Positions 1-13,022 are shown, counted from the first letter of the whole stretch. The stretch is 63,363 nucleotides of DNA, filler included, from Olpidium bornovanus S191 (GCA_017911155.1; 21 parts of 21 records of this genome joined end to end with filler, not necessarily neighbours in it), one strand, 5' to 3'. Notes: generated by a model not told the origin, from the letters alone. Numbers and translations are program-made.

Positions 1-727
1 AGGGAAGTAATGTTGCCAGGTATGGCGGCAATGGCGGTCCTGACAGTGTCATTTAAACCATCAAGATAAAGGACCATTTGACCATGGTCGTTCAATTCCC
101 CATTGAGAAGGGCAGCCGTGGCGTCGAATTTCAGGGTGTACGCTTGAACGGTATCTGTCTGGTGAAGTTGCCGGAGTTGACGACTGACAGCCAAAGAATC
201 TTAAGACGGGGCAAAGTGTGTTTGAAGTAAAGCTTGGAGGGCCGGCCACGAATCATCTCCTGTGGAGTGTTTGACGGTAAGTCAGCTGGTGCTCCAGTGA
301 GTTTGTTAGCAGCGAGAGCGCTTTGGTAAGCCGCTGGGATTTGCACCAATGAAAAATAGGTATTCAAATGATCGCAGAACTGTCTGAGCGCTTGAGGTCC
401 TCCTCTCGAATCAAATTTTGGGAGGTCGGTCAACATGGAGCGAAGGAGCTCTTGAGGCATTGCAGGTAAATGTTGTTCGGGGGCCGGATGGGAAAGTCGC
501 ACGCTACTCTTTTCCTTTCCCTGTACATGGGCCTTGTCCTGTAGGAGGATGCTCATGTCATGGAGTTCGGCACGGAGATGATCAATTTCGATTTGTTTCG
601 GGTCGGTGTCGCGTTCCAGGTGGCGTGACGGCCCAGCCGGTGTCGGTGTATCTGTCAACTCGAAAGGGACCTTGGTGAATATTGCTCTCTTTCCGGCGGT
701 GGGAACGTCTTCCTTGTCAAGCGGCAT
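1..727 (-). pseudogene. Ty3/gypsy-type Gag (capsid), frameshifted, one in-frame stop, truncated by the window edge
   Basis: ORF 131-727 has LPKFDSRGGPQALRQFCDHLNTYF. An alternate frame from about 255 reads SWPALQALLQTHFAPS*DSLAVSRQLRQLHQTDTVQAYTLKF...YLDGLNDTVRTAI, the typical retrotransposon-gag pattern. Confidence 0.8.
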
Positions 728-739
728 TTTGCGGCGTCA

Positions 740-1560
740 ATAGCGACAGCGACGACTGTGAGGCGCCGGCCTCGAGCGAACAGCGACGGCGAACGGCGAC
801 GGCGAACGGCGACGGCGAACGGCGGCGGCGAACGGCGACGGCGAACGGCGGCGGCGACGGCGACGGCGGCGGCGGTCGGCGATGGCGGTGGCGGTCGGCG
901 ACGGCGGACGGCGACGGCGGTCGGTGAGCGGACGGCGACGGCGATCGGGGAGCAAACGCTGCGGCGGGAAGCGGCGCTGCGGCGGAGCGCAGCGGCGGCA
1001 ATGGGCGGCTGCTGCGAAGGTGGCGGAGAAGCGCAGCGGCTGCGGCGGCTGCGAAGACGCAGCGGCGATGAGATGACGGCGTCGGCGCAGAGGCGATCTG
1101 AAAGATGGCTTGCGGCGAAGAAGGCGGCGAAGCTTCTCCGTCAGGTCCGCGCTGCTGGGGAATCTTATCGACGCGTTGGCGAGCGCAAAACCGGTTTGGA
1201 AGGCATCGAAGCGCAGAGCGAAGCGCAAAAGCGGTAGCGAAGCGCAGGGCGAAGCGCAGGGCGAAGCGCAGGGCGAAGCGCAGGGCGAAGCGCAAAAGCG
1301 GCGGCGAAGCGCAGAACGGCGGTCGTTGAGCGCAGAGCGGCGGCGAAGCGCAGAGCGAAGCGCAAAGCGGCGGAGCGCAGCGGCGGCGAGCGGCGGCGCT
1401 GCGGGGATGGCAGCTGCGGGACGGCGGCGGCGCAGCGGCTGCGGCAGCGCGACGGCGGCGGCGGTCGGCGACGGCGGCGGCGGTCGGCGATGGCGGCGGC
1501 GATGAGTGTCCGGGGACGGCGGCTGCGGCGGCGGCGGGCGTCAACGGGAGGGGAAGGGGC
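740..1560. repeat. GC-rich low-complexity leader of element A (CGGCGA/CGGCGG units; GCGAAGCGCAGG 12-mer array at about 1240-1295)
   Basis: Visible directly. It generates the many spurious R/A-rich ORFs here. Confidence 0.9.
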
Positions 1561-1567
1561 GTCCCGT

Positions 1568-1580
1568 TGGGCTCATAACC
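1568..1580 (-). promoter_or_regulatory. Primer-binding site complementary to the anticodon stem-loop of initiator tRNA-Met
   Basis: The plus strand reads TGGGCTCATAACC (sense tRNA-iMet anticodon arm) and abuts the LTR terminus TG at 1581. Confidence 0.85.
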
Positions 1581-1984
1581 TGTTTGAGTTTGGTGTTTCG
1601 CCGAAGGTTGAGCGTTATATTGTACCGTGGTTTACGCGTCATAAGAGATAAGGGATACAAAGCGCGAAATTCTCTACACGTTCAATGTCACGTGACTAGC
1701 CCATTCTGGGGAAGTACTCAAAACCCTCGACGTTCCACTACAAAGTGGGGAAACCGAGGAAGAACCATTTTTCGACCCGCTCCTTCGCCTCTTCGCCCCT
1801 TCGCCAGAACCGCCCCAAACGCTTTGCGTTTTCTCCCGGCCCGGAAGAAACCCGCGCCGTCATTCCCGACGTCGCCGTCGCTTCCGCCTCTGCAAAATTC
1901 TTTGCGTCGTTTTTTGCACCGTACTTTTCTCCTTTTCGCGTTTGTTTTTGAGCTTGTTTTTGCTCGGCCGCGCTTTCGTTTTTC

Positions 1985-3600
1985 GTGCGCTCGTTCGTTT
2001 TGTCCACTTCGTTGTTCGTTCGCTTCGCTTCGTTGTTCGTTCGCTTCGTTCGTTCGCTTTGCTTCGCTTCGTTCGTTCGCTTCGTCCGTTCGTCTGTTTG
2101 TTCGCTTCCGTTGTCCGTTCGTTCGCTCGTTTACTTTTGCTGTCAACCACGTCCTTTTGTCAAGCCGCCGCTGACGATGCCCTTGCCACGTCGTCGACGC
2201 CGACGAGGCGAAACCCCCCCGCCGCTGTCGCCGCACATGGAGGCGACGCATGCTGCTGCCGCTTCCGCAACGACTGCGCCATCCAACCGCGTCGTTCGCT
2301 CCGCCGCTGCCCCGACAACAACTGCGCCGTCACACTGCGTCGTTCATTCGCCCACATCGTCCTTCGTGCCCGTCGACTCTGCTAACGTCGACCCCGCTAC
2401 CGTCGCCATTCCGCCGTCGCCGTCCCTCGACACTCGAATGGACTTACCGCCGCTTCATGTTCCCCTGTTTGTTCCAAAACAGGACGCGCCGGCCACCGCC
2501 GCTGCCACCGCTGCTGCTTCGTCCACCCGTGTCAGACTCGAGGCCAGCCGTCACAATCCCGCAAACGCTCCTGACGCCGTCCTTCGTCAGCAGAAGCTTG
2601 CTGGACTTGCTAAGTGGCGCACTTTGATTGTCGCACGTGTTAGTGCTGACACAGCGGCCGCCATTGTCGTCGAGGTTGACACCGTTCTCCCAGCCATCGT
2701 TGACGACCCGTCAGTTTTATTGCAGGAGCTGAGTGTTACCTGCGTCACTCTCGACGAGCGGCCCATCGAGATGGCCGCCAATTACCGTGCCCCCAACCGC
2801 TCCCTGTCGCTTCTCCAGGCAAGCCTCGACCGCACGGCCGCCCGTCTCGCCCGCCCATCGATGCTGTCACCCATCGAGTGTCCTTCATGCTTGCTTACCC
2901 CTGCCTCGGTCTCGTCGCCGCAGTTCGACGAACTGCCGCGGCAGCCATCAATGTTCATCCTCCTCGTCGACTAGCTCGTCCAGATTGTCGTCTTCTGATT
3001 CAAACGAGGAGCGTTTGCTGTCCCTGAGGCCCCGTCACTGGGCCGGAGAATCGACCTGCGTTTCCCGTGTCATCCCCCACGACCACTGCATCCGCATGAC
3101 TTCCGTATGGGATAATGCGCTTCAGCGTGGTGGTGGCTGGATCGCGCGGAAGCAGCGCTTCCTCTCCGAGCTCGAGCTGTCTGAAACCTTCACTGAGGCC
3201 CAGAAGCTCGCTGAATTGCGCAACAATGTTGCCTCTGAGTTGTGCAGTTTCCTTTGGGACATGGAGTGTCATCGTCCTGTTTCGACACTCCTGGAAGGCC
3301 TTGACGTCCTCGAGAATCTGTACGCGTCGTCCTACGCGTTGAACCCAAAACAGATTTTCGCGTCAAAGGTCACCCAGCTTCGTCAGGAGCCAACCGAGAA
3401 CATGGCCGCATGCCTAGTGAAAGCGAACTCGCTATGCATTGAATACGCCGCAGAGAGCAATCTCTGACCTAATCATCACCGCCGCCGTCAAAAGGCGATC
3501 GATTTTTGGGCCCGTGATTACCTGATGCCTGCGTTCCTTCGGGGATTGCAGGATTGGTTCGCCCATCTGCGGGATGATCGATCGAAACGGTGGGGTAAGG
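1985..3600 (+). pseudogene. Gag/capsid-like retroelement ORF, frameshifted near 2950-3000 with a stop at 3465-3467; TTCG(C/T) repeat leader at about 1975-2140
   Basis: WIARKQRFLSELE...TEAQKLAEL...LENLY...FASKVTQLRQEPTENMAACLVKANSL...AFLRGL has the LxQ...E.....and F..GL spacing of retroelement capsids. No introns seen. Confidence 0.5.
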
Positions 3601-6102
3601 GAAGCAGATCCGTCGAACGACGCCCCCTGGCAGAAAGCGGCAGTGTGGCCTATTTCAGACAAGAAATTTCAAGTGCAGCTATCTAACTCCTCATCGACCA
3701 CGGCCTCTGTGCATCCACATGAAATAATTACCAATTATCGTGGCATTGATAGATTGCTGATGTCATCAACGGCAGCGAGATTTCCTAGAGCACGATCCAT
3801 TTGCGGTTGTGAATTGTTTGGGTGAGTTCGACGAGCATGGTGCATAGATTGCGCAAATTGAGAAACACCATGGTGCCATGTCCCCCCAGGATTTGCATAT
3901 CAGAAACGCCGACATCGTCAGCCGCATAATGTAAGCACTTCGAGAGAGGGCTGCCCGTGAGGAATTACAGCCTGAACGTGAGGACCGCGCTTACGATGAC
4001 AATAAAATTATTTTAATCGTCATCAAAGAGAATGTAATTAATGACATTATTCGTGGATCATTATATTCAAATTTGTCCCTTAATCTTGGGGCAAAACTTT
4101 GTGTGCTGTTCATCATGGCTTAAAACGGTGTCCGTCCGTTACCCAGACGGCGCATGCGAGCATAACATTGACTGCCGATGCCGTTGGGCGAAAATCGTTC
4201 TTCAGGAAGAACCGGGAAAGTCTAACAAAAAGACATGTGTGCTAATCCTCGAGGGCCTTTACGTAGATCGTTAAGTGAATGTTGTCAAAAGTTACCAAGA
4301 CTGCATCTCTCGTGCGCATAAGGCTCGTACAGCCTTATCATAATGTCCCCGGCATGCGGCACTTGCTCCAGCAACGGTGCGCCATTGGACCAAGGATTTT
4401 ATGGTCCTTATTGGCTATAATTGTTCCTTTGAACAAGTAAAGCTACGTCGCAACTGGCAGGTTGAAAATACAGCTACGTCGCAACTGGCAGAAGGCCTAC
4501 CGTTAGAGCGAATCTCTCGTGATTGGTTGAATACGCCGAAAACAAAGTTGTGCCACTACGACCTCTGCGGCCACACCGTCCGTGTTCTTTGGCCTGCTTA
4601 GATGACTATAAGTACATTAAATAATATTATAAATATACTCGGGCGAGTCCATAAGAGTTAGGAACGGGGACCGAAGAGTAAGCAAATGACAAAAATATTC
4701 GAGAAGGTTTTCACCGATGCGGCAAAGGCGTGTGTTGACAGGGTCATCTCGACAGCTACACTTCCGGTCGAGATGTTGAAGATCTGAGAACGGCGCTGTT
4801 CAGAGACGGAATTACTTACCGATCCCCGTTGTTCAGCCGGAACTCAGCTTTTGTTGCGGCCAGTCAGTCTGAATGCCCCAGGCTTGTTTCGAGGACGCGT
4901 AATGTAGAGAAAAGGCAGCTCTCCTTTCGCAATTCCGCGCCATACCGCGCATTTTTTCTTTTTGTGCCTATCTTTCTTCCCACAAATTCTTCTCTCACTC
5001 TTCACAGGAGCCTGCGGCAACTTGTAGCACCGTGTAACATGCTCCTCCGAGTTGTTCGTTACTCTATCATCTACTATTTTTGAGAGGAGCTGAAAAAATT
5101 ATTCAGGAAGGGGTGTCTTATTTTGCCCTGCCGTTCGAGGCGCACGTACTCAATTGATTTTCTTCCTCCCTCCCCCCCCAACCACGCATTATTTCGCCCT
5201 CGTGCCTTGTTTTCTGCGCGAAATTACACATTACTTCCTGCCTGCTGCCTTGCTTGTCTGCATCAATAACTTCCTCTTTGTTCCGCCACCAACTCTGCCT
5301 CTTGCCGCGCTTGACCGGTCTATAATCCCGGTGTTATTATTGTTTTCCGAGCTTGGAAGCAGTGTTTCCTCTACATCGTCTTCTACCAGTTGTGCTAGTT
5401 CTGCGTCACTTATCCACGACACGTCGGATAGATTTTTTCAAGCTAGTTCAGTTGAATCTGCCTACAAGCTAGTGAAACCGTCCTTACTCGTAGGATAATG
5501 AGGGTTCGCCCGAGTTTCTCCAGGCAAAGTAGGCAAATATGAAGGAGAGACGGTTGAACTAGTTTGGTGCACCTCACCCACTTTTTTTTACCTTCGTTGA
5601 GTGTGCGAGCACTACCGCTTTATTGCCATTCTCATGATCACCAAGTGTTTGGTTTTGGTAGCTTTTACGTGCTTGAACGAGGTTTATCTACCGGTCTCAT
5701 TCAAAGCTTCTCACATCTTCCATGGCGCATCGAGGTTCGACTCCTTGCCTGTTGAATGCGGCGCTTGCATGGCGATGGCGTGACATCTACCATGTCAGGC
5801 GAATTATTTCACTGGCTAGTGGATCGGAAAGCACGGTGGGACACGGCGTGTTATCCATCGATTGGAATGCTCATCAAGTTATCATAGTTCAACCGTCTTT
5901 CTCTCGGATTAATTTGGTTCGCCTACCGGAAACCTAAAGGGGCGCTGTGTTTCATTAGCGGTGCAATGATCGATTGCTTCGACTGCCGACGCACACCGCC
6001 CGCCCTCGAGCGGCGCACACCCCCGGGCGAGGTCTCTCCCATTCCTCCTTGGTCGACCCCCGCGCCACAACGCCTCACCCGCGCAAAGCGGACCTTGCCC
6101 AA

Positions 6103-8945: not shown

Positions 8946-11206
8946 ATGACTGCGACGAAGCTCCCGGTCCCTGTCGTCGTCGGGATCGCTGTGAGGTACC
9001 AGCCGGTCGCGAAGTTCGGCATGTACGTGCACGAAAGCTTCTGGACTTTGGAGTTCGACGAACAGAACTCGGATTCGGACAGAGAAAAGGACGAGCAGGC
9101 GCTCCATACGGCCATCGTCCGCCATGTCCAGTGTTTTCAGCGCAGTGGTAACTACAAAGGTAACCCTGTCTTTTTCACCGGGCTGTGCCTGAGTATGTTT
9201 TGCTTTCCCTGTATCGCGTGTAACCTCCGTCTCTCGGCAGTGATCATTGCGGGCCTTGCGACGGACGGGACGCCGTCGGCCAACCGTGACAGCCCGGAAA
9301 GACTCCGGAAGCTGGCGCGCAAGCTTTGGTTTGAAGTAGATGTCCTCCCTTGCATTAGGCACGCTGAAGGACTCGGCCTACACGACCTCGCCTGCTCTGT
9401 CTCAAGGAAGGCTCTTCAGCATCTGGAGCACAGTCTGCTTCCTGGAATCGTTCGAGTCGAGGTTGGCTGCAGGTTTGGCAGTTTATGTACTAACTTTGGA
9501 TCTATTTAACTGGAAACAGACCTAAGTTCCGTTCTTGCCACCCACCAGACACGAGGTTGAAGTAGATGCCAACGGCAGGCTGGAATTCGCTGATCTAGCC
9601 GATTACAGGGGTTTTTGCCGCCCGGAAACATGGGCCGAACTCCTCTCCACGGCCGATCGCGTGAATAAATGCAAGAAGTCCATCGTATTTTTTAACTCAA
9701 CTCCGCGTGGCGGTGGCGTCGCAATCATTCGGCATTCGACCATTCGACTTTGCAGGCTCTTGGGCATCAACGCCCATTGGTGCGTAGGCGGTGCCGTGCA
9801 TTCGTAGCAGAGCTCTCAGGAAAGCGCCATAACGATTTACAACATCTTGAAAACAGGCAGTGCCTTCGAGTTAAAAACTAATTGCCGTCCTGTTCTTCGA
9901 CAGGTACACAATGAAGCCAAATCCGGACATCTTCGTAGTCACGAAGAAGAAATTCCACAATGTCCTCCAGGGGGTGGCGACCGATACCTGGCTCGCAGAA
10001 GAGGATGAACGCCAGTACATCGAGTGGTGCCTGCAGAACGTGGACCGTTACTGGGCGGACCCCGACGGTCCCGTCGCGGGAGCGGACGTGATCGTTGTAG
10101 ATGACCCGCAGTCGAGCGGTATGATCAAGAGGTTAAAGGAGGTTAACCGGAGGGCGAAGTTCGTCTACCGCAGTCACATCGAGGTCAGGTCGGACCTGCT
10201 GAGGGACAGTTTTACCACTCAAGCGAGAACATGGAAGTTCCTCTGGCAAAGCATCCGACTGTGCGACGTCTTCGTGTCGCACCCAGTCGAAAGCTTTATC
10301 CCAGATGACGTCCGGGAGTCGGGGATGCAGATTCTTAAAATGCCCGCCATAACTGACCCTACCGACGGACTAAACAAGCCTCTCGACAAGTATTCGCTAA
10401 ATTATTATCACGCTCTGTTCAACCGCGCTGCCCTCGAAAATGGCGCGACAAAAGCGGATTTCACTCGTCCTTATTTCGTGCAGATATCGCGTTTCGACCC
10501 TTCCAAGGGCATACCAGATCTTGTGGATGCATACGTCGAGTTCCGACGATCACCAAAAACCGGCCGCTTTGAGACTCAGCAAATTCCCCAGCTTATTATC
10601 ACGGGCCACGGTTCCATAGACGATCCGGTAGAGTGTTCGGCGATCGCATTTTTGTGAGTCCACAGATCTTTAACGCTTCTCTATAATGCTTTTTTAAAGG
10701 AAGGCGTATCGGTACATAAAGAGATCATGGCGCACATTAAAAGTATTGTTGCGAGTGCCAGCGCGGAGAACGCCTTCTGCCCCAGCGGCGCAGAAGCTCG
10801 GGTATCGGACTCGACGGTCAAGGTCCAGGACATCGTGCGGGACATCCACGTTGTGCGTCTTTCGCCCTCGGACCGGACGCTTAACGCCCTCCTGCAAACG
10901 GCGCTCGCCGCGTTTCAGTTGAGCCATCGCGAGGGGTTCGAGATAAAGGTCACCGAGGCCCTCCTCAAAGGCGTTCCCGTCGTCGCGTACGCCGCCGGCG
11001 GCATCCCGCTCCAGATCCGGCACGAAATCGACGGCGTCCTGCTTCCCGTTGCCGACGTCCGCGGCGTCGCCAACGCCATGTGGCGTCTCGTTCTCGAGCC
11101 GGCATACCGCGCTCACCTCTCCAAGAACGCTCGCTCGCAAAACCGCGAAGAGTTCTTGACCCCTTGCAATGTACTCAAGTGGTGCAAGGTCATGCTCGAA
11201 TCCTGA
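8946..11206 (+). CDS. Fungal trehalose phosphorylase / trehalose synthase, glycosyltransferase family 4 (ccg-9-like), multi-exon
   Basis: FFNSTPRGGGVA, KKKFHNVLQG, VVDDPQ, YRSHIEVRSDL, QISRFDPSKGIPD, GHGSIDDP, LSHREGFEIKVTEAL, YAAGGIPLQI. Confidence 0.92.
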
Positions 11207-11816: not shown

Positions 11817-13022
11817 ATGCCGGTTCGGGAACCGACGCCGCAGGCACCGTCACCACCGCCGCCGCCACCACGTTCGCGGCCCGAATGCGGAAAGTACTGC
11901 TGTAACGTGCGCCGCGACCGACTCCCGTGCAAGGTCCGTCTCGTCACCGGAGAGTCGCCGCTGGCCTTCCTCGTCGCTGCGCTCGCCCTGCTCGGGCCCA
12001 TAGGGGCGTACGCCGGTCTGGTGTAAGTCGGCCTCCATGCCGCTTTTGGTCGAACGGGCGCGGGGTCACCGGCTCAGGCGCTGGACTCCGAGATTTCCTG
12101 CAGGTTGCCTTACTATTGGTCTACCGTTCGGGCGCCAATCGTGGCCGCGTTCGCGATTTACCTCTTCCTGCTGGTGGTCGTCAGCATGCTGAAAGCGAGC
12201 TGGACGAATCCCGGTGTGAGTTTGTCAAACTAGTGTTTTTTCGCTCCTTTTCGCAGGGTTTCCAGGTTGACGAAACAGTGTCAGTTTCTCCCGAAATCCG
12301 TTGACGCCGACCTCGGCATCCCGACCAACGCGAGGTGGCCGACGATCTCTGGCTCTCGAATTGCGACCTACCGCACCCCGGAGATCGCCACCACTGCGGA
12401 ACCGCCCTTCACTGGCGTCCACGGCGGGGACATCCCACAGCGCCAGCTGCAACATTCTGTCCGTGCGCCGCCGCCGCGGATCGTGCCGGTCAAAGAGTCG
12501 GCTGGTCGATCGCCGGTGGTGTGCGAGGCGTCACAGAAGTACTGCGTGACCTGCAGGATCTGGAGGCCTCTCAGGTCCAGCCACTGTCCCATTTGCGACC
12601 GCTGCGTCGAAGTGGAGGACCGTAGGTTGGACTTGTTGCGGCTGATGCTACGTCGCAAAAGCCTGTTGCTCGCGGAGAATACGGTCTAATGCGCGGCCCC
12701 CCCCGCCGTTCGACCGAAAGATCACTGTGTCTGGTTGAACAATTGTGAGACAGCTCCCCAGCTTTGATATTCTTTTTGCCGGCGCATCAGATGCAAGAAA
12801 TATCCACCCCGCTGACGTTGATGACGTGAAAAAGGCGTCGGCCGGCGAAATTACCGCTATTTCTTCATCTTTATGTTCACCTGCACTCTCGTCTGCGTCT
12901 ATGTGCTCGTCACCTGCATCGCTATGCTCGTGCTGGTCTGGCTGGACGCCAACAGGGCCACCGCGGGAGGCGTCGGTTTCGGCCGCGCCATCGCGTGGTA
13001 CCCGGGAACTTTCATCCTCATG
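11817..13022 (+). CDS. DHHC palmitoyltransferase, Erf2/ZDHHC9-like (3' partial)
   Basis: SWTNPG and KYCVTCRIWRPLRSSHCPICDRCV. The DHHC motif is rebuilt across intron 12622-12720 (GAC C|AT CAC TGT), followed by VWLNNC|VGRRNYRYFF. Confidence 0.93.

What the first reader, a model, noticed from the sequence alone, without database searches (positions are those of the whole stretch)
1..1742. Gypsy-type gag downstream of a copia/Ty5-type half-tRNA primer-binding site
Seen: LTR end (...CAAACA), then GGTTATGAGCCCA, a leader of about 0.8 kb, and an ATG opening a capsid with gypsy motifs (PKFD...YF...SW..L...F...RQL.Q..TV..Y...YL.GL). No second LTR or junction is visible between PBS and gag. Established: priming from the tRNA-iMet anticodon-loop fragment characterises Hemivirus-type Ty1/copia elements (Drosophila copia, yeast Ty5), whereas Ty3/gypsy elements normally use tRNA 3' ends or self-priming. 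Inference: this is either a gypsy lineage that adopted half-tRNA priming or a copia/gypsy chimera sharing a 5' cis-module. It is the best candidate for a new system in the window.
Basis: partly seen in the sequence, partly recalled or inferred. Interest (0 to 1): 0.8.

Follow-up and report, generated by a model that had tools for sequence, protein, structure and literature searches.

The report
Broken copia-type retrotransposon 5' end
This is the decayed front end of a Ty1/copia-type jumping gene from a probable early-diverging fungus; its half-tRNA primer site is normal for that superfamily, and only its capsid gene looks "gypsy-like" to standard protein profiles, so it is not a new system.

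Summary
An LTR end (...CAAACA, 1581) is followed by GGTTATGAGCCCAAC (1580-1566), an 838-nt GC-rich tandem-repeat leader, and a gag ATG at 727. The gag is broken by a frameshift near 280-290 and a stop at 203-201, and the piece edge cuts it off.

The "gypsy" reading does not hold. The gag belongs to a family found in zoosporic fungi (Olpidium bornovanus, Borealophlyctis nickersoniae, one Logan sample). In those relatives the gag is followed by a copia-type protease. One Borealophlyctis contig (L012) carries a contiguous element: LTR, the same 15-nt PBS, homologous gag, then protease, integrase, chromodomain and RVT_2 reverse transcriptase. That is Ty1/copia order and RT type. Anticodon-loop tRNA-iMet priming is already described for copia, Ty5, plant Osser/Bryco lineages and fungal Copia families.

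One unusual point remains. This lineage's gag scores on Pfam Retrotrans_gag and Ty3_capsid, not on the copia-specific gag model. By profile comparison it bridges a gypsy gag and copia gags. An old capsid swap is not excluded (about 12%), but retained ancestral similarity is more likely.

Verdict: a new member of a known kind, low interest.

The parts
1581..1742 (-). Putative 5' LTR (162 bp, TGTAG...CAAACA). The 3' end is fixed by the adjoining PBS. The 5' end is unverified.
   Evidence: Sequence read. There is no second copy in the window. Relatives have short LTRs of about 190 bp with TGT...ACA or ...ATA ends directly before the same PBS. L004 2698-2889 is confirmed by an 88.7% identical copy at L003 1512-1703.
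1566..1580 (-). Primer-binding site GGTTATGAGCCCAAC. It is complementary to ...GUUGGGCUCAUAACC, the anticodon stem-loop (anticodon CAU) of initiator tRNA-Met.
   Evidence: Exact and unique in the window, with 0 of 200 shuffles matching. An identical 15-mer lies directly after the LTR in L002 (1387), L004 (2890) and L012 (808), although their LTRs are otherwise barely alignable with the window's. A yeast oligo in a paper on Met-tRNAiMet (presumably a tRNAiMet probe) ends in GGTTATGAGCCC (PMC11230868).
728..1565 (-). Long 5' leader (838 nt, about 73% GC). It is mostly tandem repeats (776-948, period 13; 1207-1369, period 12; 1367-1537, GCG-rich).
   Evidence: A similarly long leader (about 750-875 nt) separates PBS and gag in L004. 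No LTR-like junction was found in it by blastn against the relatives.
290..727 (-). gag, first reading frame: the ATG at 727-725, a variable N-terminus, and the first half of the capsid N-terminal domain (LPKFDSRGG...KLTGAPA).
   Evidence: tblastn of P0013 aa 1-158 maps to window 727-293. hhalign against the lineage profile A3 gives E 1.6e-13. The big search found P0001, P0002 and P0003.
280..290 (-). Approximate site of the frameshift that breaks gag.
   Evidence: Homology switches frame between window 293 and 257.
201..203 (-). In-frame stop codon (TAA) inside the capsid domain.
3..285 (-). gag, second reading frame: the second half of the capsid domain (SWPALQALLQTHF...RQLRQLHQTDTVQAYTLKFD...LYLDGLNDTVRTAI). 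It is cut off by the piece edge.
   Evidence: PF03732 at 8.6e-5 for 3-200. hhalign against A3 gives E 8.8e-14. It is 44% identical to P0013 over 66-85 aa.

Best explanation
Window 1-1742 (minus strand) is the 5' part of a dead copy of an LTR retrotransposon of the Ty1/copia superfamily. It belongs to a lineage present in zoosporic, early-diverging fungi.

Inferred mechanism, from the known copia/Ty5 mechanism:
- The element's RNA starts in the short LTR.
- A 5' fragment of host initiator tRNA-Met, ending in the 3' side of the anticodon stem-loop (...GUUGGGCUCAUAACC-3'), anneals to the 15-nt PBS next to the LTR.
- That fragment primes minus-strand strong-stop DNA.
- gag encodes a two-lobed retroviral-type capsid plus one CCHC knuckle.
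- pol follows in copia order: protease, integrase, reverse transcriptase/RNase H.

In this copy gag carries a frameshift and a stop, and everything after the capsid N-terminal domain is lost at the piece edge, so the copy is inactive.

The 'gypsy' look of the gag reflects the shared ancestry of retrotransposon capsids and the way Pfam splits them. This lineage's capsid sits between classical gypsy and classical (plant-type) copia gags.

Shown here: the anatomy, the homology, and the domain order in relatives. Inferred: actual use of the half-tRNA primer, and that the window copy once had the same pol.
For: 1. Anatomy in the window.
2. Both gag pieces match the lineage profile A3 (Olpidium, Logan and Borealophlyctis gags) at E about 1e-13. 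tblastn of P0013 against the window gives E 5e-28 across both frames.
3. L005 holds the closest relative, P0013. Its gag is followed, after one in-frame TAA, by IIDSGATEHM, which hits Pol_BBD at 5.7e-15.
4. L002/P0003: the same PBS, then gag, a CCHC knuckle and Pol_BBD (IIDSGCTQHM) in one ORF.
5. L012: LTR, then PBS GGTTATGAGCCCAAC at 808, then gag (PF03732 5e-10, PF19259 6e-8). A 714-codon ORF follows with Pol_BBD, gag_pre-integrs, rve, SH3_retrovirus, Chromo and RVT_2 (5.9e-40).
6. Pol_BBD, gag_pre-integrs, rve and SH3_retrovirus co-occur with copia gag PF14223 in ordinary copia polyproteins. A true gypsy element (L008) shows Asp_protease_2, RVT_1, RNase H, rve and SH3_Tf2.
7. Literature:
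   - Half-tRNA priming is known for copia and Ty5 (PMC5371799).
   - It is used exclusively by Ty1/copia lineages in plants (PMC6317226).
Against: - No pol is visible in the window itself, and no full-length copy of the window's own subfamily was recovered. In that subfamily only the protease is seen (L005).
- The link from the window to L012 rests on gag homology of 31-43% identity (E 1e-7 to 1e-12 pairwise; 1e-13 to the profile) plus the identical PBS.
- The lineage's gag does not hit copia-specific PF14223. It hits PF19259 Ty3_capsid above cutoff.
- It aligns over more columns with a gypsy gag (149) than with a copia gag profile (75).
- Its best PDB and Foldseek matches are gypsy-derived capsids, led by the PEG10 CA C-terminal domain.
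Confidence: 0.85

Rival explanations
1. Ancient capsid swap. The ancestor of this fungal copia lineage replaced its gag with one from a Ty3/gypsy element. The family would then be a true inter-superfamily chimera: gypsy capsid, with copia LTR/PBS and pol.
For: - The Pfam signature of the lineage gag is PF03732 at 36-51 bits plus PF19259 Ty3_capsid at 30-51 bits, with no PF14223. This resembles or exceeds a real gypsy gag (L008: 34.8 and 22 bits). Ordinary copia gags give PF14223 at 72-95 bits and PF03732 at only 20-29 bits.
- hhalign to the gypsy gag covers the whole N-terminal domain, including the IPK[FY]DG motif (149 columns, E 1.2e-12).
- Best PDB sequence hit and best Foldseek hit: PEG10 CA C-terminal domain, at 28-30% identity in the Foldseek alignment.
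Against: - The same profile matches the copia gag profile at least as strongly (E 2.6e-13). The copia profile and the gypsy gag do not match each other (E 0.12). That is the pattern expected of an intermediate or slowly evolving capsid, not of a nested gypsy gag.
- Comparators were few and plant-biased: four copia gags and one gypsy family.
- No gag phylogeny was possible.
- The structure model is of low confidence (pLDDT 64.5), and all retroelement capsids share the fold.
- The capsids of the two superfamilies are reported to be homologous (my recollection of Krupovic and Koonin 2017, not checked here).
Confidence: 0.12
2. One reading: a Ty3/gypsy lineage that adopted half-tRNA-iMet priming.
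For: The gag hits gypsy-associated HMMs. The window shows no pol, so the window alone cannot exclude this.
Against: All relatives whose sequence continues past gag into recognisable pol show a copia-type protease (three loci). L012 has a copia-type integrase N-terminus, SH3_retrovirus and RVT_2 in PR-IN-RT order behind the same PBS and gag. A Gmr1-like gypsy (IN before RT; PMC2774666) would be expected to hit RVT_1 rather than RVT_2; this expectation is my inference and was not tested here.
Confidence: 0.02
3. Accidental juxtaposition. The LTR/PBS and the gag belong to different elements, joined somewhere in the repeat-rich 0.8-kb leader. Alternatively, the PBS match is chance.
For: The leader is long, is built of tandem repeats that could hide a junction, and has no counterpart in the relatives' DNA.
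Against: The identical 15-nt PBS sits upstream of homologous gags in L002, L004 and L012 from another genus. The exact 15-mer is not expected by chance. L004 also has a long leader.
Confidence: 0.01

Closest known systems
Hemivirus-type Ty1/copia elements (Drosophila copia, yeast Ty5; plant Osser, Bryco and Gymco-II lineages)
   Same: The PBS lies directly after the 5' LTR and is complementary to the anticodon stem-loop region of initiator tRNA-Met (half-tRNA priming). Relatives have copia-type PR, IN before RT, and RVT_2. There is a single CCHC knuckle.
   Different: The gag is recognised by PF03732 and PF19259 rather than by copia-type PF14223. The Borealophlyctis relative carries a chromodomain after the integrase. 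Phylogenetic membership in the genus Hemivirus was not tested.
Fungal Copia families with anticodon-loop tRNA PBS (e.g. Copia-28_PHord of Puccinia) and the Helenus non-autonomous elements they mobilise (Kojima 2024, PMC10886601)
   Same: The host is probably also a fungus. [quoted passage not shown]
   Different: The host groups differ (zoosporic fungi versus rusts). No tRNA-like sequence was seen in the window's LTR.
CoDi-A Ty1/copia elements of diatoms (Llorens et al. 2009, PMC2774666)
   Same: A copia-type pol with a chromodomain at the integrase C-terminus, as in relative L012.
   Different: The host kingdom differs and the relationship is untested. Whether the window's own family has the chromodomain is unknown.
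Ty3/gypsy capsids (Ty3 Gag3, PEG10, Arc; Pfam PF03732 and PF19259)
   Same: Two-lobed alpha-helical capsid. Motifs are shared: IPK[FY]DG, KLTG.A, W..L...F, Q..(S/T)V..Y...F, GL...(V/I)R. HMM and profile matches were found.
   Different: In relatives the gag is attached to a copia-type protease, integrase and RT, and to a copia-type PBS. It matches a copia gag profile equally well.

Membership tests
Ty1/copia (Pseudoviridae) LTR retrotransposons | pol domain order PR-IN-RT-RH | tested here: inconclusive
   The window is cut before pol. It is met in relative L012: Pol_BBD, gag_pre-integrs, rve, SH3_retrovirus, (Chromo), RVT_2 in one frame.
Ty1/copia (Pseudoviridae) LTR retrotransposons | Reverse transcriptase of the copia type (Pfam RVT_2) | tested here: inconclusive
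   Absent from the window, where tblastn finds no pol. It is met in L012 (RVT_2, 5.9e-40). No RT tree was built.
Ty1/copia (Pseudoviridae) LTR retrotransposons | Copia-type aspartic protease (Pol_BBD, D[ST]G[AC][ST].H) directly after gag/NC | tested here: inconclusive
   Not in the window. It is met in three relatives: P0003/L002 (5.8e-17), L005 (5.7e-15, the window's closest relative) and L012 (3.6e-11).
Ty1/copia (Pseudoviridae) LTR retrotransposons | gag recognised by copia-type gag models (PF14223 / PF14244) | tested here: not met
   No PF14223 or PF14244 hit for the window pieces or any relative, even at E up to 10. A copia gag profile does match by hhalign (E 2.6e-13). This is a Pfam label, not a formal criterion of the superfamily.
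Half-tRNA (Hemivirus-type) priming | PBS adjacent to the 5' LTR and complementary to the anticodon stem-loop of initiator tRNA-Met, not to a tRNA 3' end | tested here: met
   GGTTATGAGCCCAAC at 1580-1566, directly after ...ACA. It is conserved in L002, L004 and L012. The complement GGGCUCAUAACC contains the anticodon CAU and the G-C run of the initiator anticodon stem. A yeast oligo, presumably a tRNAiMet probe, ends in the same 12-mer.
Half-tRNA (Hemivirus-type) priming | A cleaved tRNA-iMet 5' fragment actually used as primer | not testable with these tools
   [quoted passage not shown] The host tRNA-iMet gene was not available.
Ty3/gypsy (Metaviridae) | RVT_1-type RT and PR-RT-RH-IN order (or Gmr1-type order with a gypsy RT) | tested here: not met
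   Relative L012 has RVT_2 and IN before RT. For contrast, the gypsy element L008 shows RVT_1, RNase H and rve. The window itself lacks pol.
Ty3/gypsy (Metaviridae) | Retropepsin-type protease (RVP / Asp_protease_2 / gag-asp_proteas) | tested here: not met
   Relatives have Pol_BBD instead.
Ty3/gypsy (Metaviridae) | gag matching Retrotrans_gag / Ty3_capsid | tested here: met
   Window piece 3-200: PF03732 at 23.1 bits against a cutoff of 24.1. Relatives: PF03732 at 36-51 bits and PF19259 at 30-51 bits, above the cutoffs. The feature is not exclusive, since PF03732 also hits ordinary copia gags weakly.

The most novel reading that the evidence does not exclude
The Olpidium/Borealophlyctis lineage is a deep Ty1/copia branch whose capsid is closer to Ty3/gypsy capsids than to other copia capsids. 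Two origins are possible: an ancient inter-superfamily gag exchange, or retention of the ancestral capsid form. It also has a chromodomain integrase. If gag exchange were shown, it would be a documented case of modular recombination between the two great LTR-retrotransposon superfamilies.
Probability: 0.12. Interest if true: 0.55.

Novelty: new member of a known kind. Interest (0 to 1): 0.22.

Why it matters
As found, it matters little. It is one more dead copy of a copia-type retrotransposon, with the primer type already known for that superfamily, including in fungi.

It is a useful caution. A 'Retrotrans_gag/Ty3_capsid' label or PKFD/RQL.Q..V..Y motifs do not assign an element to Ty3/gypsy. 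Protease, RT type and domain order do.

The lineage is of modest specialist interest. It seems undescribed. Its capsid links the gypsy and copia gag profiles. One member has a chromodomain integrase, which by 2009 had been reported among copia elements only for diatom CoDi-A (PMC2774666). It could therefore help reconstruct how capsid and targeting modules were distributed early in LTR-retrotransposon evolution.

Tried and rejected
- Word-index protein search with window gag piece 131-727: no hit, because only proteins of 109-346 aa are reachable.
- Exact look-up of ten window ORFs, to find the source contig and walk beyond position 1: none is on record. The piece could not be extended.
- L003 first looked like gag followed by copia IN and RT. 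blastn then showed two LTR copies (1512-1703 on +, 1945-1756 on -) between the gag remnant and the IN-RT fragment. It is a nest and was not used as proof.
- L001 (Olpidium P0001): no PBS within 1.9 kb upstream and no protease downstream. It is probably a truncated or gag-only copy.
- Metagenome scan with the Olpidium/Logan gag alignment: it returned only a plant-type gypsy family (L006-L008) and an unrelated knuckle protein (L009). The gypsy family was used as a comparator.
- Viral-contig scan: nothing.
- tRNA and Rfam scans of the window and loci: nothing, so the host tRNA-iMet was not obtained.
- The ORFs on the plus strand next to the LTR (1985-3467) were tested as a possible second gag: no Pfam hit and no match to the lineage profile.
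- Structure prediction of the capsid gave only pLDDT 64.5. Foldseek confirms a retroelement capsid fold but cannot separate gypsy from copia origin.
- Ke et al. 1999 (the Ty5 primer paper) is not held in the library.

Full report
**1. What is in the window**

The feature lies on the minus strand.

- Reading 1742 to 1, a short candidate LTR (TGTAGTGG...CTCAAACA, 1742-1581) is followed at once by GGTTATGAGCCCA.
- A leader of 838 nt follows (1565-728). It is about 73% GC and consists mostly of tandem repeats with periods of 13, 12 and 3.
- An ATG at 727 opens an ORF whose product starts MPLDKEDVPTAGKRAIF and runs into LPKFDSRGG...YF...KLTGAPA.
- The homology then changes frame near 280-290. In the new frame it reads SWPALQALLQTHF, a TAA at 203-201, then RQLRQLHQTDTVQAYTLKFD...LYLDGLNDTVRTAI, up to the piece edge.
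The copy, however, is broken twice and truncated before any pol.
- The exact 15-mer GGTTATGAGCCCAAC is unique in the window and absent from 200 shuffles.
- There is no tRNA gene or Rfam family here. The sequence is a PBS-like site, not a tRNA remnant.
- Its complement, GUUGGGCUCAUAACC, contains the anticodon CAU in a CUCAUAA loop flanked by the G-C run typical of initiator tRNA. That attribution is established knowledge recalled from memory.
- A yeast oligo in a paper on Met-tRNAiMet (presumably a tRNAiMet probe) ends in GGTTATGAGCCC (PMC11230868).

**2. What the gag is related to**

- Pfam gives only a near-threshold Retrotrans_gag hit for the second piece (8.6e-5).
- The word-index search found nothing in its length range.
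- The exhaustive search found four proteins, three of them gags: P0001 (Olpidium bornovanus, 448 aa), and P0003 and P0002 (Borealophlyctis nickersoniae).
- Follow-up searches added P0005-P0008 (Borealophlyctis) and P0013 (Logan run SRR23651775).
- The window's two pieces match a profile of these gags (A3) at E 1.6e-13 and 8.8e-14.
- P0013 maps collinearly onto both window frames by tblastn: aa 1-158 to 727-293 and aa 173-257 to 257-3, E 5e-28.
- Even the N-terminus is shared: MPLDKEDVPTAGKRAIF in the window against MPFDNEDRPSAS..GKGAIF in P0013.

**3. What follows that gag in relatives**

- L005 holds P0013. Its gag ends at one in-frame TAA and the frame continues PIIDSGATEHM..., which hits Pol_BBD at 5.7e-15.
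- In L002, P0003 is a single ORF with gag, a CCHC knuckle and Pol_BBD (IIDSGCTQHM, 5.8e-17). The locus carries GGTTATGAGCCCAAC about 200 nt upstream of the ORF.
- L004 has the same PBS directly after a 192-bp LTR (TGTTGG...TTCAACA). A second copy of that LTR in L003 confirms its boundaries.
- The decisive locus is L012 (Borealophlyctis contig JADGKA010002038.1). It runs LTR end, PBS at 808-822, gag ORF 1009-2145 (PF03732 5e-10, PF19259 6e-8) and a knuckle.
- L012 then has a 714-codon ORF (2459-4600), continued after one stop to the contig end. This ORF carries Pol_BBD, gag_pre-integrs, rve, SH3_retrovirus, Chromo and RVT_2 (5.9e-40).
- That is Ty1/copia domain order with the copia RT family.
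- For calibration, ordinary copia polyproteins found in the same session show Pol_BBD, gag_pre-integrs, rve and SH3_retrovirus.
- A true gypsy element (L008) shows Asp_protease_2, RVT_1, RNase H, rve and SH3_Tf2.
- Gmr1-type gypsy elements also have IN before RT (PMC2774666). By my inference, not tested here, such an element should hit RVT_1 rather than RVT_2, which is not the case in L012.

**4. Consequence for the finding**

- The PBS and the gag belong together. The same pair occurs in three further loci from another genus.
- The element family is copia-type.
- Anticodon-loop tRNA-iMet priming is the known mechanism of copia and Ty5 (PMC5371799).
- In plants it is confined to Ty1/copia lineages such as Osser, Bryco and Gymco-II (PMC6317226).
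- It is reported for fungal Copia families and is the dominant type among their non-autonomous Helenus partners (PMC10886601).
- So there is no unusual pairing of priming mode and superfamily.

**5. What remains unusual**

- The lineage's gag does not hit the copia-type gag model PF14223, even at permissive thresholds. It passes the cutoffs of PF03732 and PF19259 (Ty3_capsid).
- Ordinary copia gags give PF14223 at 72-95 bits and PF03732 at only 20-29 bits.
- Profile comparison shows that the lineage gag bridges the two types:
  - against a plant gypsy gag, E 1.2e-12 over 149 columns, including the IPK[FY]DG start;
  - against a copia gag profile, E 2.6e-13 over 75 columns;
  - copia profile against gypsy gag, not significant.
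- The best solved-structure matches are gypsy-derived capsids. The PEG10 CA C-terminal domain gives E 3.7e-4 by sequence. By Foldseek it gives a TM-score of 0.83, normalised to the target.
- Ty3, Ty1 and copia capsids also appear among the matches, and the model is of modest confidence (pLDDT 64.5).
- I read this as a slowly diverged or deep copia capsid. An ancient gag exchange cannot be excluded with the few comparators available; I put it at about 12%.

**6. Limits**

- No full-length copy of the window's own subfamily was obtained. Within that subfamily only the protease (L005) is seen.
- The piece could not be extended, because none of its ORFs is on record.
- The window's LTR 5' boundary is unverified.
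- The host is inferred only loosely as a eukaryote, probably an early-diverging fungus. The grounds are the neighbouring intron-split trehalose-synthase-like and DHHC genes and the taxonomy of the nearest gag relatives.
- L003, initially promising, is a nest of fragments and was discarded as evidence.

**7. Verdict**

The gag does look gypsy-like to HMMs and the PBS is copia-type. The element, however, is a copia-type retrotransposon using its superfamily's known priming mode.
- It is a new member of a known kind, of low interest.
- A minor open question remains about the origin of its capsid. A side observation is a chromodomain integrase in a copia-type relative.

Noticed in passing
L012:2495-4600 (aa 444-491 of that ORF): There is a canonical chromodomain (PF00385, 1e-12; ...FVIEKIVAEK...YRVKWQSYDESENTWEP...) between the integrase SH3 domain and RVT_2 of a copia-type element. 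Per Llorens 2009 (PMC2774666), a chromodomain integrase in Ty1/copia was then known only from diatom CoDi-A.
   Followed up: partly
L003:1-1703; L004:3654-5429: These are gag-only derivatives. P0008 and P0006 share the gag but continue into a non-protease C-terminal extension. In L003 the ORF is followed by an LTR copy (1512-1703) with no PBS after it. They may be non-autonomous TR-GAG-like copies of the same family.
   Followed up: partly
L005:1446-1448: gag and the protease are in the same frame, separated by a single TAA. This could be stop-codon readthrough or simply a mutation. In L002 the two are fused in one ORF.
   Followed up: no
window 1743-3467 (+): Diverging head-to-head from the LTR is a C/T-rich tandem-repeat stretch (1975-2131). 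After it come ORFs 2177-2974 (Pro/Ala/Ser-rich) and 2733-3467. They have no Pfam hit and no match to the gag profile. Their nature is unknown.
   Followed up: partly
window 9535-11206 (+) and 12267-12689 (+): These look like host genes. One is a trehalose-synthase-like glycosyltransferase split into exons (TreT_GT1 1.2e-19; Glycos_transf_1 3.1e-14). The other is a DHHC palmitoyltransferase fragment (1.2e-7). They indicate a eukaryotic, probably fungal, chromosome.
   Followed up: partly
L004:2022-2666 (+): An ORF just upstream of the LTR hits Cas12f1-like_TNB (4.7e-9) plus a C2H2 finger. It may be a TnpB/Fanzor-like remnant in the chytrid genome.
   Followed up: no
L012:8-661 (-): A second gag fragment of the same family lies in inverted orientation immediately upstream of the L012 LTR. 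The two copies are head-to-head, which suggests clustering or nesting of this family.
   Followed up: no
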